DNA of 64,000 nucleotides from positions 173,610 through 237,609 of IMG/VR virus record IMGVR_UViG_3300045972_000138; one strand, 5' to 3'. Shown piece by piece: positions 1-44,880 of the stretch. Made by a program: the position numbers and the translations under genes. The notes below the pieces were generated by a model. It was not told the origin of the DNA. It was given only the letters and a program-made list of their open reading frames with translations, and ran no database searches. Each line of letters opens with the position of its first letter. Positions within the stretch are counted from its first letter, which is position 1.

Positions 1-2
1 CT

Positions 3-1133
3 GTATCGATACCTCCGGTTGCAAGTTTCACTAGTACACCGGTATCCGGGAATGTCCCATTTAATGTAACATTTACTGATACATCAACCAACTATCCTAC
101 AAGTTGGTTGTGGCATTTTGGCGATGGAACAACATCAACAGCAAGAAATCCTACACATACCTATACTACACAAGGTACATACAGCCCAACATTAACAGCT
201 ACAAATTCGTCAGGTAGCGGTACAGGCGGCGGTGGGTCTATTACAGCAAACCCTGCTGTGTTTGCTGCCAGCGCAACTATTCTTACTGGTTACATACTTG
301 GAAACTGGTTCTCTAGTAGCTACACAAATGGCAAATTTGTTATAGTTGACTATGGTAGTGCGAATAGTTATTATTCATCCGATAACGGATCATCGTGGAC
401 ATTAGGTAATACAGGTGCGTTACACGGTATTCGTGGACTATCACATGGTGCATATTATATGGCCGGTGTCCAGGCGAATAATGGGAATACAAATGTTGGA
501 TACTACAGTGGTGATGGCACAAACTGGTATACATTGACATTACCATCCGTACAACAATGGTGGGGTGCAGTATATGGCAATGGTGGATATGTATTTTATG
601 GATCTGTTACGGGTGGGCAAATTGCGCTATCGGGCGATTTAGGCAGTTTTTCAATGATATCAACAGGTGTTTCATCGGCATATACTAATGCATACTTCGG
701 TAATGGTATATATATGTTATGCACTTATGTTGGTGCTCTTGTCATGACTAGTAATGATGGTGGACAAACCTGGACAAGGCATAATACACCAGTCCCATTC
801 TATAGTGTGGCATACGGTAATGGCGTATGGGTAGGTACAACGGGCGGCATATCTGCTACTGTGTATACCAGCACTGATAATGGTGTGACATGGACAACAC
901 ACATAAATGCAATGCCGACCAACTCCGGATGGCGCGCAACAACATACGGCAATGGGGTCTTTGTATCAGTAGCAGACAACGGTGGCGGTTTAGGTAATGC
1001 TGCATACAGTACCAATGGCGTAAGTTGGACACTGATTGGCAATATGGATAGATCAGGTTGGGCAAGTCTAATATATGCAAATGGTACATTTATTACAACG
1101 TGCGGCGGTACAGAGCTTGCTAAGGTAATTTAA
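3..1133 (+). CDS. PKD-domain plus BNR/beta-propeller protein (virion/receptor-binding), 5' truncated
   Basis: The frame is open from position 3 (PVASFTSTPVSGNVPFNVTFTDTS..WLWHFGDG = PKD motif). A GSGTGGGG linker precedes repeated S-x-D-x-G-x-T-W and AYGNGxFV blades. Confidence 0.8.
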   Translation, partial: VSIPPVASFTSTPVSGNVPFNVTFTDTSTNYPTSWLWHFGDGTTSTARNPTHTYTTQGTYSPTLTATNSSGSGTGGGGSITANPAVFAASATILTGYILGNWFSSSYTNGKFVIVDYGSANSYYSSDNGSSWTLGNTGALHGIRGLSHGAYYMAGVQANNGNTNVGYYSGDGTNWYTLTLPSVQQWWGAVYGNGGYVFYGSVTGGQIALSGDLGSFSMISTGVSSAYTNAYFGNGIYMLCTYVGALVMTSNDGGQTWTRHNTPVPFYSVAYGNGVWVGTTGGISATVYTSTDNGVTWTTHINAMPTNSGWRATTYGNGVFVSVADNGGGLGNAAYSTNGVSWTLIGNMDRSGWASLIYANGTFITTCGGTELAKVI

Positions 1134-1192
1134 TAGGTTGACTAGAGCATAATTGCTCTGTATAATAAAGGCAAGTCCACTAACTATACAGA

Positions 1193-1579
1193 GTGATTAT
1201 GGAAACTAAAGATTTACACACCAAAGAAGACGCACTGGAGTTTGCAGAGAAGATGCACAATGACGATAATGCTGTTGACATTGCAAAAACTGCTGATGGT
1301 CTGTTTCGTGTGCGTTGGATTAAGAACAAAAAGTACACAACGTACGACGGCAAAGAATTCACTGATGAAGTTTGGATGACAGAGAAAGAAGAACTTATTT
1401 GCATCCAAGATCTAACCGAAGCGCACGCCAAAAATATCATTCGTATGATGTTGCGTAATAGCCGTGAAACAAATCAGGCAGCGACAGCAATGCTCGAAAG
1501 CTTGTCTGCACTTGCAGATGTGTTTGCTACTAGCAACGAAGTTGAGATTCCCGAATCCAGTAATCACGTGTTGCATTGA
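1193..1579 (+). CDS. hypothetical protein
   Basis: 128-aa ORF with an upstream TATAAT; the ATG at 1199 is an alternative start. Confidence 0.65.
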   Translation: MIMETKDLHTKEDALEFAEKMHNDDNAVDIAKTADGLFRVRWIKNKKYTTYDGKEFTDEVWMTEKEELICIQDLTEAHAKNIIRMMLRNSRETNQAATAMLESLSALADVFATSNEVEIPESSNHVLH

Positions 1580-1728
1580 CGTGATAAATAATAGTGCGTA
1601 TAATGCATTAAAAGGATAAATATGGACACAATTGAACACATACAACTTTTGATTGCAGAATTATGGACCAATTGGGATTTTGTGGCACCCGTGCTAGTCC
1701 CTATTGCATATTTTCTTAACTAATAACC

Positions 1729-1803
1729 CTGGCGTTCGTTCAACGGATAGGACATCTTTCTTCTAAAGAGATAATAGTGGTTCGATTCCACTACGCCGGA
1801 CCA
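1729..1803 (+). tRNA. trnR: tRNA-Arg(TCT)
   Basis: Acceptor CTGGCGT/ACGCCGG, anticodon loop CTTCTAA, T-loop GGTTCGATTCC, encoded CCA. Confidence 0.95.
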
Positions 1804-1828
1804 ATTTTTAAACCACCAAGGACTTAAA

Positions 1829-2053
1829 ATGGAAATGACTAAAGTGTATGCCGCTCCCATTCTTGCAGAAGAAATGATTGCTTTGCGTGCAATCGACGCG
1901 TCTAACGCAGAACTTCGCGCACGGAATGAGGCACGCCTTTTTGAATTCAAGGAGTCGATGGGTATCAAGTATCTGTTGCATCCCGACAACGCACCAAAGC
2001 GTCAAGAATATGTTCACGTGCTGACGCACAAAAAAGAAACTATCAACGAGTAA
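1829..2053 (+). CDS. hypothetical protein
   Basis: ORF with an AAGGA SD. Confidence 0.65.
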   Translation: MEMTKVYAAPILAEEMIALRAIDASNAELRARNEARLFEFKESMGIKYLLHPDNAPKRQEYVHVLTHKKETINE

Positions 2054-2056
2054 TAC

Positions 2057-2257
2057 GTGAACGACTTAGTTACGCTGAAAAACATTCTAGCCGTTTTAAT
2101 TGAAAACGGCGTACACAACGAAGTAACACAGCTCGATAATGCTGTGCTCTTCGAGGGTGTTCCGCAGAATGTAATATACAAGGATGATTTGGTTGCAGCA
2201 GGTGCAACTTATGATTCAAACTTCGAAGCCTGGATGTTTTGGGGCAACGAAGAGTAA
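2057..2257 (+). CDS. hypothetical protein
   Basis: ORF directly following the previous gene, GTG start. Confidence 0.6.
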   Translation: MNDLVTLKNILAVLIENGVHNEVTQLDNAVLFEGVPQNVIYKDDLVAAGATYDSNFEAWMFWGNEE

Positions 2258-2301
2258 AGCACGCAACTCTGATAAATAACATTATTGGAGTCGAATGCTT
2301 T

Positions 2302-2859
2302 ATGATATGTGAACATTGTTTAAAAGAATATACAAATAAATCCGGATATTCTAACCACATCAGGCGCTGCCCATCTAACCCGAATCGGGTAATGGAGACA
2401 ATGTCCCCCGAAGGTCGACTTAAAATAAGTAAGTCATCAACCGATTACAATAAGATAAAGTGGGCAGATCCTGTTATACGAGCAAAACACAAGCAGTCAA
2501 TGAAAGATGCCGTAAAGAATAATCCAGATTCTTACACATCATCTAATCGTGGAAGAACTAAACAAATAATTGTTGATGGTATTAAATTACAAGGGCAATG
2601 GGAAGTAGATTTTTATAATTGGGCAAAAGAAAAAGGATTGAGCCCAGAAAGACCAACTATAGCATTTAAGTATGAGTGGAATGGTGAAAGATTTTATCAT
2701 CCAGATTTTTATATACCATCACTAGATTTATACGTAGAAGTGAAGGGTTATGAAACAGATAGGGATAGAGCAAAATGGTCGCAATTTCCGGGTAAGTTGC
2801 GTATAATAAAAGCTGCAGAGATAAAACAGATTAGGCAAGGGTGCTTTGAGCGAGTTTAG
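2302..2859 (+). CDS. zinc-finger plus PD-(D/E)xK nuclease, putative free-standing homing endonuclease
   Basis: N-terminal CEHC..HIRRC and C-terminal YHPDFYIPSLDLYVEVKG. It has its own ATAAATA box (2272) and GGAG SD. The stop codon lies inside the tRNA-Met 5' end. Confidence 0.7.
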   Translation: MICEHCLKEYTNKSGYSNHIRRCPSNPNRVMETMSPEGRLKISKSSTDYNKIKWADPVIRAKHKQSMKDAVKNNPDSYTSSNRGRTKQIIVDGIKLQGQWEVDFYNWAKEKGLSPERPTIAFKYEWNGERFYHPDFYIPSLDLYVEVKGYETDRDRAKWSQFPGKLRIIKAAEIKQIRQGCFERV

Positions 2860-2924
2860 CATAAAGGTAGTGCCGAGAACTCATAATTCTTAAGGTCCGG
2901 GTTCGATCCCCGGGGCTCGCACCA
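2850..2924 (+). tRNA. trnM: tRNA-Met(CAT) (elongator Met or Ile2)
   Basis: Acceptor GCGAGTT/GGCTCGC, anticodon loop CTCATAA, T-loop GGTTCGATCC, CCA end. Confidence 0.92.
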
Positions 2925-2956
2925 AAGCATCTTTCCCTAATCTTAGAAAGACACAC

Positions 2957-3163
2957 ATGGCAGAAATCAAACTAACAAGCGTATGGGCAGTTGACATTAT
3001 TGAATCTGAGCGCGGTTGGGGTTCTAAGGTCGACGAAACAAAACTTTTCGAAACACAGGAAGAAGCTGTGAAGTTTTCGAAAGATTACAACGCAAAGTAC
3101 AATACCGCTACAGAAGTACCGGATTGGTATATGTCTGCTCAGACTCCGTACAAGGTTAAATAA
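2957..3163 (+). CDS. hypothetical protein
   Basis: 68-aa ORF with an ESERGWG motif seen in small phage proteins. Confidence 0.65.
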   Translation: MAEIKLTSVWAVDIIESERGWGSKVDETKLFETQEEAVKFSKDYNAKYNTATEVPDWYMSAQTPYKVK

Positions 3164-3429
3164 TCAACTAAGGGCCGTGCTCTAACATTCCAACGATTCG
3201 CCTACTTCGGTATATTCCAATGGTACGCGGCTGTAAATATATGTTGGTTGATAAAGGTGGCTACCGCGGTAGAATACGAAGGTAGTTACAGGCAGTAGCA
3301 TATCTTGATGACTGAGAATGTATTCTACCGAAAGGTCCCTATACAAAAGCTTTCATTCACCTCTATGCGTGACTGCCACCTATTCAAATAGTAGTTGCTC
3401 TACTTCCTATTTAATGTATAATAGGAAGC

Positions 3430-3933
3430 ATGAAGCAAATACTTATACTCCTAGCAATGGTGCCTACAACGCTGTATAACACAGTATGCCCTAAAATGCC
3501 AAAGATGGATGCCGCACAAGAAAAGTGCTTGGCTACTACCATTTACGGAGAAGCACGTAGCGAACCCGAACAAGGGCAGGTTGCAGTGGCTTATACACTA
3601 CTAAATCGCGCTAAAAATAAGACCATATGCGATGTTGCACTAGCACGCAAGCAATATAGTGTATTCAACAATAATCCTACATTACGAGCAATAGCGACAT
3701 CCTTGCACCTGTTACCAGAACAGAAAAATACAATTGACCAAAAGAGTTGGGAAATGGCTGTTCGTGTTTCAAGGATAGTTATGTATGGATTAACACCAGA
3801 CCCAACTAACGGTGCTACTCATTACATTGCTGACAAGGTCATGAAAGTAAAAGGATACAAATATCCTAAGTGGTCAAAAGAATATAAGGTTGTGGCAACC
3901 ATCAGCAACCATAAATTTTATAAAATCGGTTGA
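3430..3933 (+). CDS. cell wall hydrolase, SleB/Hydrolase_2 family
   Basis: CLATTIYGEARSEPEQGQVAVAYTLLNR, QYS and DPTNGATHY motifs; N-terminal signal-like segment. Confidence 0.88.
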   Translation: MKQILILLAMVPTTLYNTVCPKMPKMDAAQEKCLATTIYGEARSEPEQGQVAVAYTLLNRAKNKTICDVALARKQYSVFNNNPTLRAIATSLHLLPEQKNTIDQKSWEMAVRVSRIVMYGLTPDPTNGATHYIADKVMKVKGYKYPKWSKEYKVVATISNHKFYKIG

Positions 3934-3977
3934 CTGGTACAGGTCGAACTCATACAATAAATAGATCTAAGGATTAT

Positions 3978-4859
3978 ATGTCTATTAAGTACACCTTGTC
4001 GGTAATTATGTTGGCCTCACTGGTTGCTTGTGGAGGTGGGGGCGGAGGTAGCCCAGGCAGCGATGTTGCATCACCTACCAGATTACCAGTTAACGGTATT
4101 GTCTTATCTGCAGATCTGGCACCGGCCAATCTTAGTTGCACCGATTATGTAGAATACGATACAGGTAATGGCAGACTAACCAATAATGTCTGGAATAAAC
4201 AAGCAGCAGGAACATTTCCGTACGCACAATGCATCACAGCTAAAGGACCACTATCAGCAAAGGTGTATGGATGGTCGTGGAATTGGCCTGCGAACTCTGG
4301 CAGTGTATTTGCCTATCCAGAAATAGTGTACGGATGGAAACCGTGGAACGGCGGATCGAGTAATGTACCTACATTGCCTATACGTGTTTCGGCAATTACC
4401 ACTTTACGTTTCTCCTATGATCTTACTGTGACAACAAACGGTAAACACAATGTTTCTACATCTATGTGGTTAACAAGCAACGGTGCGACGAGTAATAAAC
4501 CGGACTCGTCGCATATCACAACCGAGTTTATGATATGGACAGATGGATATGATTTTCATCCTGCTGGTAATTTGGCAGCAATATATACAACCCAAACGGG
4601 AACACAATACGAGGTATGGTTTGATCCATATCAAACCGATGCATCGGGGCAGAATGCAAATGTATGGAAATATGTTGCGTACCGTGCAGTAGTTCCTAGT
4701 CTTACGCCAACTATCGATTTGAAATTAATACTGCAAGATGCAGTAACAAGAGGATATGTTTCGGCTACCGATTATGTATCTAATGTTGAACTTGGAAACG
4801 AAATTATGTCCAGTTCAGGTCAAACGTGGATTAACTCTATTTCGTTAGTAGCACAATGA
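3978..4859 (+). CDS. glycoside hydrolase family 12 lipoprotein (endo-beta-glucanase-like)
   Basis: Lipobox LVAC followed by GGGGGGS; NNVWN, YPEIVYGWKPW, TEFMIW and VELGNEI GH12 motifs; AAGGA SD before the ATG at 3978. Confidence 0.8.
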   Translation: MSIKYTLSVIMLASLVACGGGGGGSPGSDVASPTRLPVNGIVLSADLAPANLSCTDYVEYDTGNGRLTNNVWNKQAAGTFPYAQCITAKGPLSAKVYGWSWNWPANSGSVFAYPEIVYGWKPWNGGSSNVPTLPIRVSAITTLRFSYDLTVTTNGKHNVSTSMWLTSNGATSNKPDSSHITTEFMIWTDGYDFHPAGNLAAIYTTQTGTQYEVWFDPYQTDASGQNANVWKYVAYRAVVPSLTPTIDLKLILQDAVTRGYVSATDYVSNVELGNEIMSSSGQTWINSISLVAQ

Positions 4860-5179
4860 AACTTACAACATATCAAAAACACCTATTCTCCAGATTCAAA
4901 CTTCGCGGTGACTATGTCACTTGGTGTTTTAATTCTAAAGGGTGGTTGCGTATTCATCGATTCATTATCCGCTGGCGTCTAGTTGACATCAACGCCGTAA
5001 GCTGTGCTATAATACACTCAGCAGTGTGAGTGCAGTCCTATATAGTAGGCATACAAATAAGTCCTACTATATTTTATGCAGATAATGCTTGCTAGAGTCA
5101 TAAATAAGTGCTACAATAAGCACTTAGCAAAACAAATAGTTGATCGCAACTGTTTGTGGTAAGTTCTTTAACAAAATAT

Positions 5180-5266
5180 GCGAGTGTGGCGAAATAGGTA
5201 GACGCAACAGACTTAAAATCTGTCGGGGGCAACTTCATGCCGGTTCGATTCCGGCCACTCGCACCA
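5180..5266 (+). tRNA. trnL: tRNA-Leu(TAA)
   Basis: Acceptor GCGAGTG/CACTCGC, loop CTTAAAA, long variable arm, T-loop, CCA. Confidence 0.96.
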
Positions 5267-5274
5267 TAGTTTAT

Positions 5275-5356
5275 GTCCCTGTCGGTGGAGAGCGACACCT
5301 CCGCGCTTAACGGCAATGCAGAAATGCAAAGGATACGAAAGTATCAAGGGACTCCA
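5275..5356 (+). ncRNA. tRNA-like RNA with GAAA tetraloops and a CCA end
   Basis: GTCCCT/AGGGAC-T-CCA acceptor, GTCG/CGAC D-like arm, and two GAAA-capped hairpins, one replacing the T arm. Confidence 0.55.
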
Positions 5357-5363
5357 ATTTTAA

Positions 5364-5416
5364 GGGATACTTACAGCAATTTTAATTCACCGTAAATGAA
5401 ACCAAAAAGGTATCCT
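5364..5416 (+). ncRNA. mini stem-loop RNA presenting an anticodon-like 7-nt loop
   Basis: GGGATAC/GTATCCT closing stem around TTCA-CCGTAAA-TGAA. Confidence 0.4.
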
Positions 5417-5421
5417 GTTTA

Positions 5422-5496
5422 GCCCTTGTAGCAGAGTGGTAATGCACGCGCCTTGTAAGCGCGGGATCTGGTGTTCGATTCACCACGAGGGCACCA
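5422..5496 (+). tRNA. trnT: tRNA-Thr(TGT)
   Basis: Acceptor GCCCTTG/CGAGGGC, loop CTTGTAA, T-loop GTTCGATTC, CCA. Confidence 0.95.
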
Positions 5497-5585
5497 TATT
5501 AGAATGCACTAACTGAGTACAAGGCTCAGCGTGCGAATTCAGTAACTAAGCCTCAAGAGGAAGCTATAGTGCATTCTAATATGGT
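5493..5585 (+). repeat. spacer hairpin S1, 19-bp perfect inverted repeat
   Basis: ACCATATTAGAATGCACTA (5493-5511) / TAGTGCATTCTAATATGGT (5567-5585). Confidence 0.9.
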
Positions 5586-5699
5586 GTGTTGATCGTTAAA
5601 TCAAAAAGTAAAGCGAAGTACAAGCTAGCCAATAGACCCGCGAACGTACTTAGAATCGTTCATGACAGTGAAAGCCTGTAAGGGGAGATTAACATACCA
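5583..5699 (+). ncRNA. structured RNA module E1 (GGT...ACCA)
   Basis: 12-bp closing stem GGTGTGTTGATC/GATTAACATACC plus internal hairpins. Confidence 0.5.
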
Positions 5700-5760
5700 T
5701 ATTAGAACACACTACGACTCTAACGAGGGCTGGTTCACCGGTAGTGTGTTCTAATATGGT
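5696..5760 (+). repeat. spacer hairpin S2, 20-bp perfect inverted repeat
   Basis: ACCATATTAGAACACACTAC (5696-5715) / GTAGTGTGTTCTAATATGGT (5741-5760). Confidence 0.9.
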
Positions 5761-5835
5761 ATACCGATAGCCCAAAGATAAGAGGCAAGTATAATTACTG
5801 ACAGTGCAGGTTAGATTCCTGTTCGGATACTACCA
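5758..5835 (+). ncRNA. tRNA-like module E2 lacking a 7-nt anticodon loop
   Basis: 9-bp bulged acceptor plus A-CCA, D-like arm, 4-nt loop at the anticodon position, T arm GCAGG-TTAGATT-CCTGT. Confidence 0.55.
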
Positions 5836-5976
5836 TATTAAACTACATTCGTTGATCGGTGAGCCCAGGGCAGATCCGCAAATGTCGAAGTGTTGTTACA
5901 CACAGTTTCGGTCCTTGCCATATAGTGCTTGGTATCGGGTAAGACGGTTTAATTCCGCAGTGTAGTTTAATATGGT
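5832..5976 (+). repeat. spacer hairpin S3, 18-bp inverted repeat
   Basis: ACCATATTAAACTACATT (5832-5849) / AGTGTAGTTTAATATGGT (5959-5976), one G-U pair. Confidence 0.88.
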
Positions 5977-6098
5977 GATGTAATGTCCTCGCAAGGGACT
6001 GTGGCAGAGCAACGCGGATCGTTATACGGCAATGCTCAAGAGAATGCAACCACATGGGGCAAGAGTAAGTGAACGTGAGTAACCGATTACCTCTACCA
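5974..6098 (+). ncRNA. structured RNA module E3 (GGT...ACCA)
   Basis: Starts GGTGATGTAAT and ends ATTACCTCTACCA; internal GTCCT/GGGAC and GAGCA/TGCTC stems. Confidence 0.45.
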
Positions 6099-6219
6099 TA
6101 TCAATCCGCAAAGCTCTTGCGACGGGGCTTTACAGGACGGGAATTGACCCGAAACGTGTCGCAGCGTTGGCATCTGGTAAGGATGCATAGCCTGAATTAA
6201 CAGGGCGGATTGATATGGT
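6095..6219 (+). repeat. spacer hairpin S4, 15-bp perfect inverted repeat enclosing a multi-hairpin domain
   Basis: ACCATATCAATCCGC (6095-6109) / GCGGATTGATATGGT (6205-6219). Confidence 0.88.
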
Positions 6220-6645
6220 GTGCTAAGTTAAGTGCCTTAAACTGAAAGAGAATGAAAAGTAGAATTGCAGCTAATGTAGCCTGGCCAGGTACGGCATTAG
6301 ACGTTCTAGTTAGTAGATTTCTGGAGGGGTAGTTTAGTGTAATAGGAGCACGCAACCTTTATGGCGCCGAAGAACGGTGCGATACCGTGGCTATTAAAGG
6401 TGCTTAACTTAGATTTCCGAAGCTTGTAATCAAGCCTGACACGACAGCATAACGTGGGTTGGACCTTAGCCAAGTAAAAATATTAAGGTGCAGTATTGCC
6501 ATGCATAGAAGTGTGATAGTTTACGGGGCGGAGTTCTTAAAACTACCCTGGTATGGTCCTAATCATTAGGCCAAAGAAAGTGTTGTTAACGACACCAAAG
6601 TCATCCTAGACTGGAAAAACTAGGGTGCATATATTTTAAAGATTT

Positions 6646-6834
6646 GCCTCAGTACCTCAGTGGATTTGTGATTGTACTACTTTAAAGGAACGTTTAGTAG
6701 GGATTGCACTTTAAAGACGAATGCTTCTTCTTGCACAGATGCGCGATCTGGAATGGTTTTAGTTGAAGTCAATACTGTAGAGGGCCGGATTTCTAATCCG
6801 AAAGTCGGGGGTTCGATTCCTTCCTGCGGCACCA
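6646..6834 (+). tRNA. trnR: tRNA-Arg(TCT) interrupted in the D-loop by a 114-nt insert (6665-6778) with a BHB motif
   Basis: The 5' part GCCTCAG-TA-CCTC-AGTGGA and the 3' part A-GAGG-G-CCGGA-TTTCTAA-TCCGA-AAGTC-GGGGG-TTCGATT-CCTTC-CTGCGGC-A-CCA join into a 75-nt cloverleaf (acceptor 6/7 paired). Confidence 0.75.
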
Positions 6835-6904
6835 TATAGAAACACATTTCCGACAGTAGGCGGAGGTGACAATGTCCATTCGGGTGAATGTGTTTCTATA
6901 TGGT
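6831..6904 (+). repeat. spacer hairpin S5, 18-bp perfect inverted repeat
   Basis: ACCATATAGAAACACATT (6831-6848) / AATGTGTTTCTATATGGT (6887-6904). Confidence 0.9.
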
Positions 6905-7191
6905 ATGAAGCGTACTGTAACACTTAGTGGGAAAGCGCCTTCTGTTGTATATGATTTAGCAACTCACCTCTGGTAAATCACGACAGGAGAAAGTTACAGC
7001 CATTTTTATTATGGTAAATGCGGAGACTGATCCGCGAGTTAGGTTGCGTCACCGGGTGGCTTATTTTGCCAAGATCACATCAGATTGAGGCTACACTCCT
7101 ACCGCGGAAATTGGGTGATGTCCGAGGGTCTGAAGCGTAAGATGAGTAGTAGGAAAATCTAAATAATGCAGGAGATCAGTACCTGTTACCA
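6902..7191 (+). ncRNA. structured RNA modules E5 (6902-7002, ends GCCA) and E6 (7013-7191, GGTAA...TTACCA)
   Basis: CTGTAAC/GTTACAG and GGTAA/TTACC closing stems, each followed by CCA and a TTTTT run; no ORF. Confidence 0.4.
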
Positions 7192-7195
7192 TTTT

Positions 7196-7334
7196 TATAG
7201 AAAGCTTCCTGAGTAGCTACACTGGAACAACTGAAATACTAATGCCAGCCCCGAAAAAAGTGGGAAAGTTTCTTAGGACCAGCCAGGAAGAGTAGGGCTA
7301 CCACGAATTCGAGCGTCACAGGAAGCTTTCTATA
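7196..7334 (+). repeat. terminal hairpin S6, 16-bp perfect inverted repeat
   Basis: TATAGAAAGCTTCCTG (7196-7211) / CAGGAAGCTTTCTATA (7319-7334). Confidence 0.88.
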
Positions 7335-7346
7335 GATAAATACTGT

Positions 7347-7562
7347 ATGGCCACAATCAAGCGAAAATCTAAAATGACAGATGATGATTTCAGACGCGAT
7401 TTCGAAGACAGTGTCATTATGGAAGAACTTGATTTTGATACCATACCAATGGAACTATTAGCAGAATTTGAAGCAATGTCTATACAGTCAAAAGGTATAG
7501 ACCAGGATGTACAAGAACATATAGAAACTGAATTTGATCAATTACGTGACACCTATCTATAA
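7347..7562 (+). CDS. hypothetical acidic protein
   Basis: ORF after the ATAAATA box at 7336. Confidence 0.65.
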   Translation: MATIKRKSKMTDDDFRRDFEDSVIMEELDFDTIPMELLAEFEAMSIQSKGIDQDVQEHIETEFDQLRDTYL

Positions 7563-7777
7563 TGCTATTAAACATATTAAAACTCCTAGTGGTGGGCAAG
7601 CCAAAGGCCGCAACTAAAACGCCAAAGTACGAATCCTGGTACAATTCCGATATACGACTGTGGACTGCACAATTTAAAAATGATTCTGGTGATCAGATTG
7701 GTAGTGCAGGATTTGGTGCCAACAAATCTTCAGCAATTGAAGATCTATTCTACCAAAACATAGACATACTAGAATAA
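7562..7777 (+). CDS. hypothetical protein
   Basis: ORF coupled to the previous stop (TAATG). Confidence 0.6.
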   Translation: MLLNILKLLVVGKPKAATKTPKYESWYNSDIRLWTAQFKNDSGDQIGSAGFGANKSSAIEDLFYQNIDILE

Positions 7778-7812
7778 TTGTGTTATACTAACCACAACTA
7801 AGAAAGATTGCT

Positions 7813-8319
7813 ATGGACATTGTATACAAAGCGCGGGTATTTGCTACTGCTGCACACTACGCGGTTAAACAGGTGCGGAAGTACACTGGTGAACCTTACA
7901 TCGTGCATCCAGCAGAAGTAGTTAACATTCTGTACAAATATGGTGCAACAGACGAAATGGCTGCTGCAGGATGGTTACACGACACAGTGGAAGACACTGG
8001 TGTCACAATCGATGTCATTTACTACGAATTTGGGCAAACCATCGGCGAATATGTGAATTGGTTGACTGACCAAACCAAGCCCGAAGATGGTAACCGTGCC
8101 GTACGAAAGAAGATGGATGCTGATCGTTTAGCACTGGCACCAGCCGAAGTGCAGACTGTAAAGTATGCTGACCTGATCTCCAATACCAGGTCCATTACTG
8201 AATATGATGCAGGTTTCGCTAAAACATATTTGGTTGAAAAGGCTTACCTGTTAAGCGTAATGACAAAGGGTAATCCGCACCTTTACGAACTTGCGATGAA
8301 GAATATTGTATCAGTCTAA
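7813..8319 (+). CDS. HD-domain protein, RelA/SpoT-type (p)ppGpp hydrolase-like (Mesh1/SAH)
   Basis: AH..Q.RKYTGEPYIVHP, AGWLHDTVEDT and VKYADLISN motifs. Confidence 0.85.
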   Translation: MDIVYKARVFATAAHYAVKQVRKYTGEPYIVHPAEVVNILYKYGATDEMAAAGWLHDTVEDTGVTIDVIYYEFGQTIGEYVNWLTDQTKPEDGNRAVRKKMDADRLALAPAEVQTVKYADLISNTRSITEYDAGFAKTYLVEKAYLLSVMTKGNPHLYELAMKNIVSV

Positions 8320-8499
8320 GGTACTCTATGAAATACGCTAAAATTGCGGTTGGAATCCTATTTGTGTTAGTGCTAGTCAAAGGTCTTCTGTTTATCTCTA
8401 GTGAAGAGAACAGTATTAGACTGAATACTGACTGGGGCATCGCAAAAGATCATCCAATAAAATAATTGACTTTGTTTAAATTACTGCTATAATACATAT

Positions 8500-9918
8500 A
8501 TGACATACCAACTTATTAAAGAAATCGCATCTGATAACTCCAAGCTTCACAAGGAAGCAGTTATCAAGCGCGAAGCACTTGCAAACAATAGCGATTTCTT
8601 TGCAGGCCTGCGCTATGCACTGGACAATATCGACACCTTCGGTGTTAAGAAGGTTCCAGAACGCAGTGGGCCCGACGGCCCTGGGTTGCCGTTTATTGGA
8701 TTTGCTGCATTAGCGAACCAACTCATTGAACGCAATATTACTGGCGGCGCTGCATTGGATGCAATTGAAAAAGGTATGCGTCTTGCAACCAACGATGAGT
8801 GGAATGGCTGGTATCGTCTCATTCTGATTAAAGATTTGAAGGCAGGCTTCTCCGAGAGTACTGTTAACAAGGCAATCAAAGATACCCACCCGCAATGGGT
8901 AATTCCAACTACGCCGTATATGCGCTGCACATTGCCAGCCAAGTCCAACATGGAAGACTGGGATTGGAGCAAAGGTATTTACAGCCAAACCAAGGCCGAT
9001 GGTATGTTTGCTAATGTGAACATCCGTCAAGATGGTTACTTGTGGGTTACTAGCCGTGGTGGTACATTGTTTCCACCCGGTAGCCTGGGCATCGAAGATC
9101 AGCTTGTCGCAGTGTTCGATAAGGGCACACAGACGCACGGCGAACTTACTGTCTATATCGATGGTGTGTTGCAAGCTCGCGAAATCGGCAATGGTATCTT
9201 CAACAGTCTGCTTAAAGGCGGATCGTTGGAAGCAAACCAGAAGGTGCATTACGATTGCTGGGATCAGATTCCAATTGCCAAAGCACTACCTAAGGGCAAG
9301 TACGAGATTGGATACGAAAAGCGGTTTACTGTTTTAAAGATTCAGGTTGATACTGCAAAGAAAGATTCAGTAACTGCACACTTGGATCCAATTGAGCTTA
9401 CCGAAACGCGCATTGTGTTCTCTATGTCTGAAGCTGTAGTGCATTACAAGGAACACCGTGCTCGCAAGTTGGAAGGCACAATCCTTAAGGCACCTACTAC
9501 AATTTGGAAGGATGGCACATCCAAAGACCAAGTTAAGATGAAGGAAGAGATTGACGTTGAGTTGAAGGTAATTGGCTTCAATCCTGGCAAGGGCAAGAAT
9601 GCAAACACATTTGGTTCTATCCAGTGTGCAAGCGAATGCGACTTGCTGGAAGTAAATGTGTCTGGTATGAGCGATGATATGCGTGCTGCTATCCACGCAG
9701 ACCGTCTGAACTGGCCCGGTAAGATTATTACTGGTCGTTCCAACTCGCTGCTGGCTCCAAGCAAAGGTAAGAAGAATGGTAAGTGGTCTCTGTTCCTCCC
9801 GCGCTTGATTGAAGAGCGTATGGACAAGACTGTTGCCGATACATTGGAACAGATCCAAGCTCAGTTTGCTGCTGCTGAAGCTGCTGTTAAATCTACCGAA
9901 GAGGATAGCGAAGAATGA
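8500..9918 (+). CDS. lig: ATP-dependent DNA ligase (T4 gp30-like)
   Basis: KADG adenylation motif, HGEL, LEGTILK, and an OB-fold with LFLPR; preceded by TTGACT/TATAAT. Confidence 0.92.
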   Translation: MTYQLIKEIASDNSKLHKEAVIKREALANNSDFFAGLRYALDNIDTFGVKKVPERSGPDGPGLPFIGFAALANQLIERNITGGAALDAIEKGMRLATNDEWNGWYRLILIKDLKAGFSESTVNKAIKDTHPQWVIPTTPYMRCTLPAKSNMEDWDWSKGIYSQTKADGMFANVNIRQDGYLWVTSRGGTLFPPGSLGIEDQLVAVFDKGTQTHGELTVYIDGVLQAREIGNGIFNSLLKGGSLEANQKVHYDCWDQIPIAKALPKGKYEIGYEKRFTVLKIQVDTAKKDSVTAHLDPIELTETRIVFSMSEAVVHYKEHRARKLEGTILKAPTTIWKDGTSKDQVKMKEEIDVELKVIGFNPGKGKNANTFGSIQCASECDLLEVNVSGMSDDMRAAIHADRLNWPGKIITGRSNSLLAPSKGKKNGKWSLFLPRLIEERMDKTVADTLEQIQAQFAAAEAAVKSTEEDSEE

Positions 9919-16977: not shown

Positions 16978-17673
16978 ATGAACTATGCCAATATCTATAA
17001 CCAACTAATTCAATCTGCCCAAGATAGGCAAACATTAGACGGTTACAAAGAAAAACATCATATTATTCCGCGGTGTGTGCAAGGTACGAACGATAAGAGT
17101 AATTTGGTTTATTTGACAGCAAGAGAGCATCTTATTGCACATAGACTTTTAGATAAAATTTATCCAGATAATTATAAAATATTCTTTGCACTGTGGTCTA
17201 TGCTTACAATGAAGACAAACAATATGCAACGCATATCAAATTCAAGAGAATACGAAAAAGCAAAGATTAGATTGCGGTCTGTCATGTCCTTAATACAGAC
17301 TGGATCTAAACGACCGCCACGGACTCCAGAGCATACGGCCAAGATTGTTGCCGCACAAAAAGGCCGAGTTGTATCAGAAGAAACAAGATCTAAGATTAGA
17401 GAAGCACGAAAATCTCAGACTTGGTCAGATGAGCAGCGCCTGGCTCAGTCAATTCGATTATCTGGTAGTGGAAATCACTTCTTTGGTAAAACGCATTCAG
17501 ATCAAACCAAATCAAAGATAAGTGCAAATAATGCAGCATCTAAGAAAGTTTCGTGTGACGGGGTTATATACGAGTCGATGGTAGAAGCTGCTGCAGGTTG
17601 TGGATTTAAACATTACGAAACTATAAAGAAACGGTGCAGGTCAGACAAATATCCAAATTGGTTCTTTATTTAA
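16978..17673 (+). CDS. HNH homing endonuclease with NUMOD3-like repeats
   Basis: EKHHIIPRCVQGTNDKSNLVYLTAREHLIAH and NHFFGKTHSDQTKSKIS; ATAAATA box at 16967. Confidence 0.88.
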   Translation: MNYANIYNQLIQSAQDRQTLDGYKEKHHIIPRCVQGTNDKSNLVYLTAREHLIAHRLLDKIYPDNYKIFFALWSMLTMKTNNMQRISNSREYEKAKIRLRSVMSLIQTGSKRPPRTPEHTAKIVAAQKGRVVSEETRSKIREARKSQTWSDEQRLAQSIRLSGSGNHFFGKTHSDQTKSKISANNAASKKVSCDGVIYESMVEAAAGCGFKHYETIKKRCRSDKYPNWFFI

Positions 17674-37895: not shown

Positions 37896-38234
37896 ATGGA
37901 ATACACAGAACGCCAACGCCGCACACTGGCCAACACGTTTAAGAAGGCACTCAAACGCTTGCCGGATTCGTTCAATGAGGTCGGGCCAACCTATGCAAGT
38001 CCGTACATCTGCGACAACATCTATCACGTATCCTGTACCCGATCTGCTGCCTTGGCATCTAGCTTGATTGCTGAACGCATTAACCGCGCATTTAGTATTG
38101 AGCGTTGGTTGAAAGATCAAAGCCCATCGATTTCCGATGATGTGCAACACGATGTACTTTGCAATGACGGCAAGAAGCTGCAAGCTTATCGCAAGGCTTG
38201 GCTTCGTAAGCTGATTGCAGAGTTTGAGGTGTAA
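37896..38234 (+). CDS. distant member of the MKTS..AKGD family
   Basis: YIC...LIAERI...IERWL...QAYRKAWLRKLIAEFE. Confidence 0.7.
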   Translation: MEYTERQRRTLANTFKKALKRLPDSFNEVGPTYASPYICDNIYHVSCTRSAALASSLIAERINRAFSIERWLKDQSPSISDDVQHDVLCNDGKKLQAYRKAWLRKLIAEFEV

Positions 38235-38457
38235 CATGCCAACAGTAGGAGACCTTTGCTGTGCAGACCCCGAAGAAGAAGGGGTGTTTTTGTACGGTGT
38301 TATTACACGCATCGAGGGAGACATCGCATACTCGGACCTTATGCCCGACCATAGCCCCGAGGGATTCGGTGGTGATGTTCCAACAAGTAAACGTGATGGC
38401 ATTTGGGTGTTTACTTCCTTTTAGTGTTATAATAAACATATCGCAACAAGGAGTTAT

Positions 38458-38778
38458 ATGGCAACAGTTAAAATCAAGTTCACATCGCCCGGAATGATGG
38501 GAACTATGTACACGCATATGGTAGGGGAGAAGACTGTTCCCTATGTGCGTGCTTGCCTTAAAGAAGGTGGCTACTACATCGAAGAGTCTGCATTGTTTGA
38601 TGTGCAAGGCGATAGCCAAGACGCAGCCGATGAAGTGTTTGACCTTACCAACAACCCTTCGCGTCAAGATGAGCGTGAGCAGGTTTACGGTCGTGGTCGT
38701 AGCTTGTCTGTAGGCGATATCGTTGTTGTGGGCGAGGAACAGTGGCTTTGCTGTTCCATGGGTTGGAAGGAACTGTAA
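38458..38778 (+). CDS. YodL-like domain protein
   Basis: GRSLSVGDIVVV...GW.EL motif. Confidence 0.55.
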   Translation: MATVKIKFTSPGMMGTMYTHMVGEKTVPYVRACLKEGGYYIEESALFDVQGDSQDAADEVFDLTNNPSRQDEREQVYGRGRSLSVGDIVVVGEEQWLCCSMGWKEL

Positions 38779-39135
38779 TGTTTAAACTAGATAGTACACC
38801 AATCGCATCCGAGTATCTTGAACACAAGAATATGGAATGCACACTGGGCGAGTATGTTGTTACTATTCGCACTCGCACAAAGGACTCGCGGACAGGCAGC
38901 TATGCGCGTGGCTTTAAGTTCAGCAGCAACACATATGGCTTCTTGGTACGCACGCTCAGGGGCACCAAGTACTACAAGCCCTCGCGCTACAGTGCTGATC
39001 ACGGCAAGAGCTGGCACGAGACATTTGAATCAATGCTGAAGCAACGTGCAGGGCTTGTTAAGTTGGATAGCAGCCAGCACAAAGAGTTCGCTTTCGACAG
39101 CATCCAACAGATCAACAAAGACTACGATCGCAACT

Positions 39136-39570
39136 ATGCGTGGCACCCGTAAGATACTTGCTGCGCTAGTGTTAGCGGCAGCAATGCCCGCATATGCCCT
39201 TATCACCACAGGGGAAATACTAGCAGCAGCCTCTTGCAACAGCATCGCAGACAATGCATACTTCGCGAGGGAGTTCGAAGCAGCATTTGGTAAGCCTGTA
39301 CGCAATGAGCAGGGTGCGCTGTGGTATAAGGCAAGCGGGGAGGCATATGGCACACAGATCCGCGAAGTCTTTGTGTCTAACGTGAGTTCTCGCTTGTTCG
39401 TAGGTGTGGTTCTCACAGGTAAGCCCGAGGCTGTAGTTGCCAGTGTCCCTACCTCCCAACTCTATCCAACTAATGTATTCCCAACCAACAATCACTGGAT
39501 AGGAACTGATGGCCGCAGCATTATGTGGCACGATGGCAAATATACGAAAATGTTTTGTACACCAAAGTAG
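39136..39570 (+). CDS. putative secreted protein
   Basis: Signal peptide MRGTRKILAALVLAAAMPAYA. Confidence 0.65.
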   Translation: MRGTRKILAALVLAAAMPAYALITTGEILAAASCNSIADNAYFAREFEAAFGKPVRNEQGALWYKASGEAYGTQIREVFVSNVSSRLFVGVVLTGKPEAVVASVPTSQLYPTNVFPTNNHWIGTDGRSIMWHDGKYTKMFCTPK

Positions 39571-40454
39571 GATTTGGTGTTATAATTGCTTATCGCAACA
39601 AGGAGCAGCAAATGAAAAAGTTCTTTAAGTACACAGCAGAACACATTGGTCGTGAACGTGCAACCAAGTTTGTTAAGCTGCTGGAATCGGAAGACGTGGA
39701 TGTGATGCACGCAATGATGGACCCGGTCTTCGAAAACCAGTTCGTGTTGTTCGTGCAATGCACCGATGCTGAAGCGAAGGTTATCAAGAATCGTGTGTGG
39801 GAACTGAACAACGGTGCCTACAACGAGATGTTGGTCGTGGATGCAGACGAGATGGAGGAGTATCTGTAATGGCTAAGCTAAACGAAACGCAAGTAAACAA
39901 AGCATACGGGAAGCTGGAAACAGCTATGCTTGCACTGCAAGAGGAAGTGGTGGACTTCAAGCGTGCTTTCCCCATTGAGTCCAGTAAGCTGGCTCTCGAC
40001 GACGCTATGAGATCAGCGATGGGCGCACTCGAGGATGTGGACAGTGACATCACATCGCATTTTGCAACTCGTTAAGGATATCAAATGACTATCGTACGCA
40101 AAGGTGTTCGTGGAACTTGGGAAGCCGAAGACAGCATTGATCTTGTAGCACTGCGGGTGCTTAAGATCCACACGCATAAGGTAAGCACCGGGCAGCTTGT
40201 TACTACTGCCACAGTGCTTACAAAGGACAATGGTTTCCTATCGCATATGGTGTATCACGACTTCTCGCAACGTGTGATCGTGAGCAAAGATCGCTGCACC
40301 GAGGGCAATGTTACTGCACAGCACGCAGCGGCAATGGCCGGGATTAACCAGATCCACAGTGCCATCACTGCACACTATGTGAAGAAAGATGAAGTGGTGA
40401 CTGCCTAACAGGAATTTTAGTGTTATAATGTACACATCAACAAAGGAGTACACT

Positions 40455-40757
40455 ATGCAAAACACTAAACCCAAGGGCGTATGTCCCTGCTGCAATGGTT
40501 CGGGTCGTATGCCTGTACCAGAGTCATCGCAACGTTGGAAGACTGTCTGTGCCGGGTATGATGCTGCCACAGACACCTTCACTTGTCATAACTGCGGCGG
40601 CCAGTATATGTATGGTCAGGCAAAAGGGGAAGTTAGCCTCAACAAAGACGGCGAACCCTGCACACACGCCTACGAGGGCATTAACGCAGGTCGTTGCTGG
40701 ACCAAGTACACTTGCAAGCACTGCGGCGACAAGTATGACGTCGATTCTTCGGATTAA
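40455..40757 (+). CDS. zinc-finger protein
   Basis: CPCCNGSG, CHNCGG and CKHC; AGGAG SD. Confidence 0.7.
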   Translation: MQNTKPKGVCPCCNGSGRMPVPESSQRWKTVCAGYDAATDTFTCHNCGGQYMYGQAKGEVSLNKDGEPCTHAYEGINAGRCWTKYTCKHCGDKYDVDSSD

Positions 40758-41025
40758 AAGGAGCACACTATGTTGATCACTCGCATTAGCCCATTTACCG
40801 GTAAGGTCAACTCTATGGAGTTGAATGTTACCTCGGAACAAATGAATGAGTTGGATTCCCCCGACCGTCGTTTGATCCAAGAGATCTTCCCTACGCTTGC
40901 CGTACACGAACGGGAATTCATTAAGACTGGATACACCCAGGAAGATTGGGACCAAATGTTTGCGGGAATGGAAGATTAATCCCAGACCTGTGTTATAATG
41001 TTTTTACTTTAACAAAGGAAGTGAA

Positions 41026-41334
41026 ATGAAAATTGCAACTACACTCCAGTTCCGTAAAGCTGTTCGCAAGTACGCGGAGAAGAAGGGACTGCTTATTGGC
41101 GAGTCCTGGACAAACAAGACTACAGCTGATGGCGAATTCGACGGGCACCGCACTGTTGGCTTCTGGATTGGGCACGCTACCGAAAAGGTTGCTGCAAAGA
41201 TCGAGAAGAAGCTCAACAAGAAAGGGCTTACTGCCAAGACACGTTTTACAGATGCAGACAGCCGCATGCCTTCGGGTAGCAGCTTTCGCAGCTGGTCCGG
41301 TACTTACATCCGCGGTACCTGCGTGCTTCCTTAA
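41026..41334 (+). CDS. hypothetical basic protein
   Basis: Own TATAAT promoter and AAGGA. Confidence 0.7.
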   Translation: MKIATTLQFRKAVRKYAEKKGLLIGESWTNKTTADGEFDGHRTVGFWIGHATEKVAAKIEKKLNKKGLTAKTRFTDADSRMPSGSSFRSWSGTYIRGTCVLP

Positions 41335-41340
41335 GGAGCT

Positions 41341-41670
41341 ATGATGCGCCCTGTAATTGTGGCGGCCCTCGTGGCGGCCCTTACAGGGTGTGCCGTCCCT
41401 GTACCGAGGTTTGAGACGGCAGTAGGGTTAGTGCAGTGGCACAAAGTGAAAGACTTACAGGATATGCGCGTCATTTGCGATGATGTGCGATTCAAAATGC
41501 CGGGAATCACATACGGCTGCTATAAGATGGATAGCGAGAACAAGGTGTGCCACATCTACGCAATGGATAACGAACGATACTTCGGTACACTTGGGCACGA
41601 ACTCAAGCATTGTTTTGATGGCAGGTTCCACGATCAATTTGGAAATAGTGCGTATCCAATCGACAAATAG
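41341..41670 (+). CDS. small HExxH (zincin-like) lipoprotein
   Basis: LTGC lipobox; CHIYA...LGHELKHCFDGRFH; paralog of 57566..57895. Confidence 0.7.
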   Translation: MMRPVIVAALVAALTGCAVPVPRFETAVGLVQWHKVKDLQDMRVICDDVRFKMPGITYGCYKMDSENKVCHIYAMDNERYFGTLGHELKHCFDGRFHDQFGNSAYPIDK

Positions 41671-41710
41671 GATGTATAATACATACATCGCAACACACTA
41701 GGAGAAGCAG

Positions 41711-42121
41711 ATGGCTTATATGTCCCAAGAGAAGAAGGCACAGCTTGCACCCGCAATCAAGGCAGTGCTGAAGAAGTATGGTATGAAGGGCACTATCGGT
41801 GTTCGCAACCATAGCTCGCTTGTGTGCAATGTTACATCCGGCCCGTTGGATGTGATTGGCAATATGTTTGAACTGGCAAAGAGCAAGCCGGGCACGCATT
41901 ACAACCGCAACCCTGTGAAGCCTACGCACATTCAAGTGAACCCTCACTGGATCAGCGAGCACTACACGGGCAAGGTGTGCGAGTTCGTGCAAGATCTCAG
42001 AGACGCAATGGATGTTGGCAATCACGATCGCAGCGATATCCAGACAGACTATTTTGATGTGGGCTGGTACATTGATATCAACATCGGTCAGTGGAATAAG
42101 CCGTTTCAACTTACCGCCTAA
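41711..42121 (+). CDS. hypothetical protein (large-polyvalent-protein-domain-like, DYF motif)
   Basis: DRSDIQTDYFDVGWYIDINIG. Confidence 0.55.
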   Translation: MAYMSQEKKAQLAPAIKAVLKKYGMKGTIGVRNHSSLVCNVTSGPLDVIGNMFELAKSKPGTHYNRNPVKPTHIQVNPHWISEHYTGKVCEFVQDLRDAMDVGNHDRSDIQTDYFDVGWYIDINIGQWNKPFQLTA

Positions 42122-44861: not shown

Positions 44862-44880
44862 CTAAGATGAGCTTTAGGAG

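What the first reader, a model, noticed from the sequence alone, without database searches (positions are those of the whole stretch)
6646..6834. tRNA-Arg(UCU) with an archaeal-type bulge-helix-bulge intron in the D-loop of a bacteriophage tRNA
Seen: removing 6665-6778 (114 nt) gives a 75-nt tRNA-Arg(UCU). The junctions fold into a textbook BHB: exon helix = D stem CCTC(6655-58)/GAGG(6780-83); 3-nt bulge GTA (6777-79); central 4-bp helix AGTG(6659-62)/TACT(6773-76); 3-nt bulge GAT (6663-65); intron helix TTG/CAA. Known: archaeal/eukaryal EndA cuts after the second nucleotide of each bulge, which here gives GA|T and GT|A and restores the D-loop AGTGGAA; position 20/21 is a known non-canonical archaeal intron site; bacteria lack EndA. 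The rest of the window is clearly bacterial-phage-like, and an intact tRNA-Arg(UCU) exists at 1729. Inference: the phage or an unknown host or phage nuclease plus an RtcB/Rnl ligase performs BHB-type splicing, and the excised 114-nt RNA (internal hairpins CTACT/AGTAG and AGAT/ATCT) may itself be functional or circular.
Basis: partly seen in the sequence, partly recalled or inferred. Interest (0 to 1): 0.92.

Follow-up and report, generated by a model that had tools for sequence, protein, structure and literature searches.

The report
Phage tRNA with conserved D-loop insert
A large virus of bacteria carries a transfer-RNA gene interrupted by a 114-base structured insert that related viruses also keep, but the archaeal-style splicing signal seen here is not conserved among them, so whether and how the insert is removed is unknown.

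Summary
Window 6646-6834 is a tRNA body split in the D-loop by about 114 nt. Deleting the insert gives a 75-nt tRNA-Arg(UCU), and the 5' piece is the only fitting 19-mer in 128 kb. A strict bulge-helix-bulge (BHB) can be drawn in this sequence, which happens in 0.3-0.8% of shuffled inserts.

I found homologues in seven metagenome contigs, giving three further distinct sequences, and all carry the insert at the same site.
- The BHB exists only in the window and its closest variant. In the other two the only G-C pair of the central helix is G.A, the 5' bulge has 2 nt, and the same 3' bases close a different helix (a three-way junction).
- The insert is under selection: 65-92% identical against 37-57% at four-fold sites of the neighbouring gene. 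It has a covarying hairpin with an invariant 14-nt loop.
- The anticodon is not conserved: UCU, UUU (with A33) and AUU.
- The insert matches no group I intron or known ribozyme.
- No EndA, RtcB or Rnl was found among 30 ORFs of at least 150 aa in the window.

Best reading: a conserved tRNA-derived RNA with a functional D-loop module, not an archaeal-type intron. Retention (0.4) is only slightly favoured over splicing by an unknown route (0.3). RNA data are needed to decide.

The parts
6607..6635 (+). weak sigma-70-like promoter match (9 of 12) ending about 10 nt before the tRNA 5' end
   Evidence: The number of such matches in the region (10) is close to the shuffled expectation (6.5), so this is only a lead.
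6646..6663 (+). 5' exon: acceptor 5' strand 6646-52, U8 A9, D stem 5' strand 6655-58, D-loop start AGUGG (A14, G18, G19)
   Evidence: Unique fitting 19-mer in 128 kb. 16-18 of 18 positions are identical in four variants. U4.C69 is a mismatch here and a G-C pair in L008.
6664..6778 (+). D-loop insert (111-114 nt in the four variants; the exact ends are ambiguous by 1-2 nt)
   Evidence: Present at the same site in all homologues. 65-92% identical between variants, against 37-57% at four-fold sites of the neighbouring HD gene. No Rfam family matches it. Its own folding energy is no better than shuffles, z = +1.1.
6668..6707 (+). insert domain 1: helix 6668-73/6702-07, 3-nt bulge, helix 6677-81/6696-6700, invariant 14-nt loop 6682-95
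   Evidence: All cells pair. Changes on both sides occur at alignment pairs 28:57, 35:52 and 36:51. The loop is 14/14 identical in all pairs of variants and occurs once in the window.
6708..6778 (+). insert domain 2, closed by helix 6708-14/6772-78. The helix has 6-7 bp in L006 and L008; here it is 2+2 bp around a 2x2 internal loop
   Evidence: The inner helices have weak support and the apical hairpin 6736-40/6746-50 is lost in L006. Conserved purine-rich motifs GGAAU and GUNGAAGU.
6659..6668 (+).
   Evidence: Pairs with 6770-76. Present in the window and L010 only.
6770..6779 (+). 3' side of the BHB (helix 6770-72, helix 6773-76, bulge 6777-79). The same bases form the 3' strand of the domain-2 closing helix.
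   Evidence: C6775 pairs with G6660 here. In L006 and L008 the base is A and pairs with U66 of the alignment instead.
6779..6834 (+). 3' exon: A21, D stem 3' strand 6780-83, anticodon arm 6785-6801 (anticodon TCT 6792-94), variable loop, T arm 6807-23, acceptor 3' strand 6824-30, A73, encoded CCA
   Evidence: ARAGORN cloverleaf after deletion. T arm, acceptor 3' strand and CCA are 28/28 identical in all variants. The anticodon arm is only 10-17 of 17 identical, with one compensated pair.
6831..6904 (+). long hairpin whose 5' arm begins at A73-CCA (18-bp perfect stem)
   Evidence: It is kept in L006, L008 and L010 through compensatory changes while the loop is unalignable. It is one of six such hairpins in 5490-7340.

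Best explanation
This is a real, selectively maintained composite RNA gene of an uncultivated jumbo phage. It has a complete tRNA body (Arg-UCU in this genome), and a 111-114-nt structured RNA module sits between G19 and A21 of its D-loop. It lies in an island of tRNA and tRNA-like units, each followed by a long hairpin that starts at the CCA.

Shown:
- The split gene exists, and the insert is conserved at the same site in four sequence variants.
- The first insert hairpin covaries and has an invariant loop.
- The tRNA top half (5' piece, T arm, acceptor 3' strand, CCA) is nearly invariant.
- The anticodon is not conserved.
- BHB geometry is confined to one lineage.

Inferred:
- The unit is transcribed with the array and released by RNase P at its 5' end and by cleavage in the flanking hairpin (RNase III-like).
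- The D-loop module is itself the selected functional part.
- The BHB here is a by-product of one substitution (C6775) in a segment that in other lineages closes the second insert domain.

My pick for the mature form is a tRNA-like RNA that keeps the module. The module would project from the solvent-exposed 20/20a/20b region while the tRNA core still folds, and the RNA would serve something other than ordinary decoding. Candidate roles are a protein-binding RNA or a decoy that presents a variable anticodon loop; I have no direct evidence for either. Splicing by an unknown route is nearly as likely.
For: - Homologues all carry the insert.
- Covariation supports the cloverleaf plus insert hairpin. 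93.9% of cells pair, 4 pairs change on both sides, and slid controls give 46-58% paired and no such pairs.
- The insert is far more conserved than neutral sites.
- The cloverleaf with the insert in place is within about 1 kcal/mol of the unconstrained minimum in all four variants.
- In L006 and L008 the D stem and the two insert domains form a tight three-way junction that leaves A14-G19 and A21 unpaired.
- The anticodon loop is the most variable exon part: UCU, UUU with A33, and AUU.
- The acceptor stem carries a mismatch in 3 of 4 variants.
- Neighbouring units also end in ACCA without being canonical tRNAs.
- An intact tRNA-Arg(UCU) at 1729 makes this copy redundant for decoding.
- No splicing machinery, group I core or known ribozyme was found.
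Against: - Nothing shows what the mature RNA looks like.
- After removal of the insert, every variant is a 75-nt tRNA with all universal tertiary nucleotides, a 7-nt anticodon loop with A37 and A38, and a sense anticodon for an A-rich codon. The anticodon stem shows a compensated pair. Both facts fit a decoding tRNA, which would probably need the insert removed.
- No natural tRNA-like RNA with a large D-loop expansion is known to me.
- Only four distinct sequences were available, and two of them are close.
- High similarity of the RNA between window and L010 could partly reflect recombination rather than selection.
Confidence: 0.4

Rival explanations
1. It is a true intron of a new kind. The conserved insert is removed after transcription by a route that does not depend on a BHB, either a phage or host nuclease that recognises the conserved hairpin loop or an unrecognised small ribozyme. 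The halves are then joined by an RNA ligase (host RtcB or a phage Rnl/PNK pair), giving decoding tRNAs: Arg, Lys or Asn, depending on the phage.
For: - The exons give a complete 75-nt tRNA in all four variants, and joining GG to UA gives the same canonical D-loop in all.
- The insert site is invariant.
- The conserved insert core is what a ribozyme or a protein-recognised intron would show.
- Anticodon changes are single steps among sense anticodons.
- More distant relatives carry an AAA_33 kinase (a polynucleotide-kinase-like domain) and an Rnl1 RNA ligase beside the same HD gene and their tRNA arrays.
- Lak megaphages have conserved tRNA 'introns' of unknown mechanism (bioRxiv 10.1101/356790).
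Against: - There is no match to group I or any self-cleaving ribozyme family.
- The insert folds no better than shuffles.
- No RNA ligase or candidate splicing nuclease was found in the 64-kb window.
- A33 in L006, A34 in L008 and the acceptor mismatches are odd for working tRNAs.
Confidence: 0.3
2. This is the reader's model: in this lineage the insert is cut at a BHB by an EndA-like enzyme (phage-encoded or unknown) and the exons are ligated.
For: - A strict hBHBh' lies in the register set by the D stem, in the window and in L010.
- It appears in only 0.3-0.8% of shuffled inserts.
- The two variants that have it are also the two with a fully canonical anticodon loop.
Against: - It is not kept in L006 and L008. 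Pair 15:130 is G.A, there are no compensating changes, and the 5' bulge is 2 nt. Alternative registers do not restore a tRNA.
- The window and L010 are near-identical here, so they count as one observation.
- A competing 5-bp helix removes the 5' bulge in the predicted fold.
- The intron interior is constrained, unlike BHB introns.
- No EndA domain is found in the window, and the local nuclease is PD-(D/E)XK.
- Bacteria lack EndA (established knowledge).
Confidence: 0.1
3. It is a tRNA pseudogene disrupted by an insertion and now decaying.
For: - Acceptor mismatches occur in 3 of 4 variants and the anticodon loops are aberrant in two.
- A redundant intact tRNA-Arg(UCU) is present.
Against: - Exons are 85-100% and the insert 65-92% identical while four-fold sites of the next gene are 37-57% identical.
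- Compensatory changes occur in the insert hairpin, the anticodon stem and the flanking hairpin.
- No terminal repeats, target duplication or other copies of the insert were found.
Confidence: 0.05

Closest known systems
Non-canonical BHB introns of archaeal tRNA genes (D-loop positions such as 20/21, e.g. Thermoproteales; reviewed in PMC4090602)
   Same: The insert sits in the D-loop one base before the 3' strand of the D stem. In this genome a strict helix-bulge-helix-bulge-helix can be drawn with cut sites that restore a 7-nt D-loop.
   Different: The host is bacterial (ppGpp hydrolase and peptidoglycan hydrolase genes, encoded CCA). No EndA was found. The motif is absent in two of four variants. 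The insert interior is conserved and structured, whereas BHB introns vary freely.
Group I introns in bacterial and phage tRNA genes (PMC3984707); one occurs in the relative L002, in tRNA-Met(CAT)
   Same: A phage tRNA gene is interrupted by a conserved structured RNA.
   Different: Group I introns lie in the anticodon loop and are 200 nt or longer, and RF00028 detects the L002 intron at 50.4 bits. Here the insert is 114 nt in the D-loop with no RF00028 hit at E up to 10.
'Enigmatic' conserved introns in tRNAs of Lak megaphages (bioRxiv 10.1101/356790)
   Same: Large phages carry oversized tRNA genes with highly conserved inserts of unknown splicing mechanism.
   Different: Those were placed by eukaryote-mode tRNAscan (an anticodon-loop model) and refined with insert-free alleles. 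Here the site is the D-loop, no insert-free allele was found, and the structure is supported by covariation.
tRNA-like non-coding RNAs: tmRNA, bacterial and phage Y-RNA-like YrlA, and the two stable RNAs of the T4 tRNA cluster (own knowledge)
   Same: An acceptor/T-arm module with a CCA end is joined to an extra domain, encoded among phage tRNA genes, and not used as an ordinary decoder.
   Different: Here the full cloverleaf including an anticodon arm is kept, and the extra domain sits in the D-loop. No Rfam match to these families occurs at the locus.

Membership tests
BHB (EndA-spliced) tRNA intron | hBHBh' or relaxed HBh' motif at the exon-intron junctions | tested here: met
   Met in the window and L010, with 11 of 11 pairs in the register fixed by the D stem. 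It arises in 0.3-0.8% of shuffled inserts.
BHB (EndA-spliced) tRNA intron | motif maintained in homologous genes | tested here: not met
   In L006 and L008 the central pair 15:130 is G.A and the 5' bulge has 2 nt. There are no changes on both sides. The best alternative registers do not rebuild the D arm.
BHB (EndA-spliced) tRNA intron | splicing endonuclease (EndA) available in the phage or host | tested here: inconclusive
   No tRNA_int_endo hit in 30 ORFs of at least 150 aa of the window. The nuclease at 2302-2856 folds as PD-(D/E)XK, and EndA is not among its 50 best PDB matches, all of which are weak (best E 0.046). The other 173 kb of the contig and the host were not available. Bacteria lack EndA (established knowledge).
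BHB (EndA-spliced) tRNA intron | RNA ligase for the cut ends (RtcB or Rnl with PNK) | tested here: inconclusive
   None in the window. An AAA_33 kinase and Rnl1 lie next to the HD gene in the distant relatives L027 and L030.
BHB (EndA-spliced) tRNA intron | spliced tRNA and excised (often circular) intron exist | not testable with these tools
   No RNA data were available.
Group I intron in a tRNA gene | group I core detectable by RF00028, 200 nt or longer, in the anticodon loop | tested here: not met
   No hit at E up to 10. The insert is 114 nt and lies in the D-loop. The positive control, the L002 intron, scores 50.4 bits.
Small self-cleaving ribozymes (hammerhead, twister, pistol, hatchet, HDV-like) | match to the family covariance model | tested here: not met
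   No such hit in the element in the window, L006, L008 or L013.
Canonical decoding tRNA | contiguous cloverleaf passing tRNA detectors | tested here: not met
   The genomic sequence is not called by ARAGORN, and Rfam gives 26.5 bits against a cut-off of 29. The feature is met only after removing the insert in silico.
Canonical decoding tRNA | anticodon conserved among orthologues, with U33 | tested here: not met
   The anticodons are UCU (two variants), UUU with A33, and AUU.
tRNA-like non-coding RNA (tmRNA, YrlA) | match to the family model | tested here: not met
   No tmRNA or YrlA hit at 6640-6910. The resemblance is functional only.

The most novel reading that the evidence does not exclude
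The insert is a new class of tRNA intervening sequence in bacteriophages. It would be a conserved, structured module of about 114 nt at D-loop position 20/21, removed by protein-dependent or new ribozyme chemistry in a bacterial cell. In one lineage it may have acquired a working BHB. The excised module could itself be a functional small RNA.
Probability: 0.3. Interest if true: 0.9.

Novelty: new variant of a known kind. Interest (0 to 1): 0.6.

Why it matters

A conserved, non-group-I insert in the D-loop means one of two things. Either bacteria-infecting phages have a tRNA splicing route that nobody has described, or they build a new type of tRNA-derived RNA by adding a domain at the tRNA elbow. 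Either would widen what phage 'tRNA arrays' are thought to encode.

It also shows that tRNA detectors miss such genes. The element is small and easy to test, which makes the question directly approachable.

Tried and rejected
- **Group I intron or known ribozyme:** no Rfam match, even when only 271 nt were searched.
- **Mobile-element insertion:** the insert is single-copy in the window and has no terminal repeats or target duplication.
- **Alternative tRNA using 6762-68 as the acceptor strand** (the Rfam 26.5-bit alignment): it skips the D arm and pairs worse in L006, so I rejected it in favour of the conserved 5' piece.
- **'Delete any interval' ARAGORN scan of 1-9000:** no other convincing interrupted tRNA. 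The scan also showed that ARAGORN accepts chance 5' pieces.
- **More homologues.** These searches added nothing:
  - two scans of metagenome contigs and two of genome contigs;
  - four DNA-pattern scans of IMG/VR;
  - a protein search with a spurious antisense ORF that covers the element.
  - Homologues came only from contigs encoding close relatives of the neighbouring HD protein. Further look-ups gave contigs without the element.
- **Cultured phages:** no close relative of the locus, and only generic tRNA similarity for the 3' exon.
- **Nuclease at 2302-2856 as a splicing enzyme:** it has a PD-(D/E)XK fold and conserved synteny with tRNA-Met in other phages, so it is more likely a homing-type or DNA nuclease.
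- **Oversized unit in another phage array (L033:7149-7245):** it gave ambiguous calls and is not a clear second case.

Full report
**Context.** The window is the last 64 kb of a 237.6-kb IMG/VR contig. It encodes phage-type genes for a bacterial host:
- an ATP-dependent DNA ligase;
- an HD-domain (p)ppGpp hydrolase;
- a peptidoglycan hydrolase;
- homing endonucleases.

It has no close relative among cultured phages. ARAGORN and Rfam find four ordinary tRNAs, at 1729, 2850, 5180 and 5422, and nothing at 6646-6834.

**The observation.**
- Removing 6665-6778 gives a 75-nt tRNA-Arg(UCU).
- ARAGORN is lenient. In a scan that deleted every interval of 10-200 nt it also accepted chance upstream pieces for intact tRNAs, so I tested the 5' piece directly.
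- Among all 127,962 19-mers of the window on both strands, 6646-6664 is the only one with at least 6/7 Watson-Crick pairs to the acceptor 3' strand and a perfect 4-bp D stem. It also has U8, A14 and G18 G19. The split gene is therefore real.
- The BHB pairs exist, and that register is the best one. Shuffling the insert gives such a motif in 0.3% of trials with a 3-bp outer helix and 0.8% with a 2-bp one.
- The junction is not fixed by the sequence: GG|UA and GGA|A both give valid D-loops.
- The constrained minimum-energy fold replaces the 5' bulge with a 5-bp helix.

**Homologues.** DNA-pattern scans of the public collections found nothing but the source contig. Contigs encoding close relatives (79-80% identity) of the neighbouring HD protein did contain the element: L006, L008 and L010-L014. 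Together with the window they give four distinct sequences, because L010-L014 are identical across the element. All four carry an insert of 111-114 nt at the same D-loop site, and none is called by ARAGORN.

**What is conserved**.
- The T arm, acceptor 3' strand and CCA are identical in all four (28/28). The 5' piece is 16-18 of 18.
- The insert is 92% (L010), 83% (L008) and 65% (L006) identical to the window. Four-fold degenerate sites of the adjacent HD gene are only 37-57% identical, and the loop of the flanking hairpin cannot be aligned. The insert is therefore under purifying selection, although recombination may contribute.
- Its first domain is a bulged hairpin with three pairs that change on both sides and an invariant 14-nt loop (6682-95).
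- On the cloverleaf plus this hairpin, 93.9% of cells pair and four pairs change on both sides. Slid controls give 46-58% paired and none.
- The second domain is well conserved among three variants but only 56% identical in L006, and its inner helices have weak support.

**The BHB is not conserved**.
- In L006 and L008 the base matching C6775 is A. The only G-C pair of the central helix becomes G.A with no compensating change, and the 5' bulge has 2 nt.
- In those two sequences the same 3' junction bases pair instead with the linker after domain 1 (alignment columns 63-69 with 127-133, 6-7 bp). This closes domain 2 and forms a compact three-way junction with the D stem that leaves A14-G19 and A21 unpaired.
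- In the window and L010 this helix is broken in the middle (U.U and U.C) and the BHB appears.
- The two structures exclude each other and differ by two substitutions. With four sequences I cannot root the change firmly. Domain 2 groups L008 with the window, which suggests the junction helix is the older state.
- Other BHB registers in L006 and L008 do not rebuild a D arm.

**The anticodon**.
- Joined at GG|UA, all four give 75-nt tRNAs: Arg(UCU) twice, with identical exons, Lys(UUU) with A33 in L006, and an AUU anticodon in L008.
- The anticodon stem keeps 4 of 5 pairs, with one compensated pair.
- The acceptor stem has one mismatch in three of the four variants.
- So the tRNA top half is under much stronger constraint than the anticodon. 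That is the reverse of what orthologous decoding tRNAs usually show. Single-step switches among sense anticodons for A-rich codons remain possible.

**Machinery.**
- The insert matches no Rfam family, including group I and the small ribozymes, in the window or in the homologues. A genuine group I intron in tRNA-Met of the relative L002 is detected.
- The insert folds no better than shuffles.
- Pfam scans of 30 ORFs of at least 150 aa in the window show no EndA, RtcB or RNA ligase.
- The nuclease beside tRNA-Met (2302-2856) gave a confident model (mean pLDDT 87). Its PDB matches are weak (best E 0.046) but are PD-(D/E)XK enzymes, not EndA. It keeps the same position next to tRNA-Met in other jumbo phages.
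- More distant relatives have an AAA_33 kinase, phosphatases and an Rnl1-type RNA ligase next to the HD gene and large normal tRNA arrays. A heal-and-seal ligase therefore exists in the wider group, but not in what I could read of this phage.

**Surroundings.** The element lies in an RNA island (5490-7340) with few ORFs. It holds six long perfect hairpins, each starting at the A-CCA of the preceding unit.
- The hairpin after this element (6831-6904) is kept in all variants by compensatory changes, so the element shares a processing context with tRNA-Thr at 5422.
- Other units in the island end in ACCA but are not canonical tRNAs. This raises the prior that tRNA-derived, non-decoding RNAs are made here.

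**Verdict.**
- The split tRNA gene is real and conserved.
- The archaeal-type BHB reading is not supported by comparison and has no machinery to support it; I give it about 0.1.
- The insert is a functional RNA module. I slightly favour a mature tRNA-like RNA that keeps it (0.4) over splicing by an unknown, non-BHB route (0.3). A decaying pseudogene is unlikely (0.05).
- The steps from transcript to mature RNA are inferred, not shown.
- Precedent for unexplained conserved inserts in phage tRNAs exists in Lak megaphages (bioRxiv 10.1101/356790). I found no report of a D-loop case in a phage.

Noticed in passing
window 5490-7340 (hairpins 5492-5586, 5694-5762, 5832-5976, 6095-6219, 6831-6904, 7196-7334): An island of long perfect hairpins (15-22 bp), plus one imperfect one (7196-7334, 87% complementary). 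The first five start exactly at the discriminator-CCA of the preceding tRNA or tRNA-like unit (ACCATAT...ATATGGT); 7196-7334 does not carry this motif. Their arms resemble each other, so leader-trailer pairing around each unit is also possible. They may be RNase III-type processing sites. They are absent after the tRNAs at 1729, 2850 and 5180.
   Followed up: partly
window 5587-5699, 5761-5835, 5977-6098; also L033:5141-5222 and L033:7149-7245: Units that end in ACCA and have an acceptor-like stem, some with a T arm, but no canonical anticodon arm. They look like tRNA-like RNAs of unknown function inside phage tRNA arrays.
   Followed up: partly
L002:4298-4600: In a relative with 64% ligase identity, tRNA-Met(CAT) is split in the anticodon loop by a group I intron (RF00028, 50.4 bits, 4322-4532).
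   Followed up: partly
L002:8579-8625 and 8671-8790: Two weak tmRNA/tRNA-like hits (E 0.0076 and 0.00026) with T arm, acceptor 3' strand and CCA but no full tRNA.
   Followed up: no
window 2302-2856: A 185-aa zinc-finger plus PD-(D/E)XK nuclease whose stop codon overlaps tRNA-Met. It has 586 homologues, the 120 listed being 59-78% identical, and the same synteny with tRNA-Met in other jumbo phage contigs (L033, L034).
   Followed up: yes
L027:8679-12040, L030:8399-14896 and L030:1978-2092: More distant relatives carry an RNA-repair cluster around the HD gene (phosphatases, AAA_33 kinase, Rnl1) next to 25-33 tRNAs. L030 also has a DUF2828 protein, which may be Ro-like (my recollection, not tested), and a Y-RNA-like (YrlA) hit of 36 bits.
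   Followed up: no
window 6413-6645, 6897-7011 and 7196-7334: Other non-coding stretches of the island are conserved at 70-88% in several relatives (L006, L008, L010, L011, L016, L019, L021), sometimes in a different order. They are probably further structured RNAs.
   Followed up: no
window 16978-17673: An HNH / NUMOD3 / I-TevI-type DNA-binding homing endonuclease.
   Followed up: no
window 38000-54000: G+C rises from about 0.40 to 0.47-0.49 across this block.
   Followed up: no
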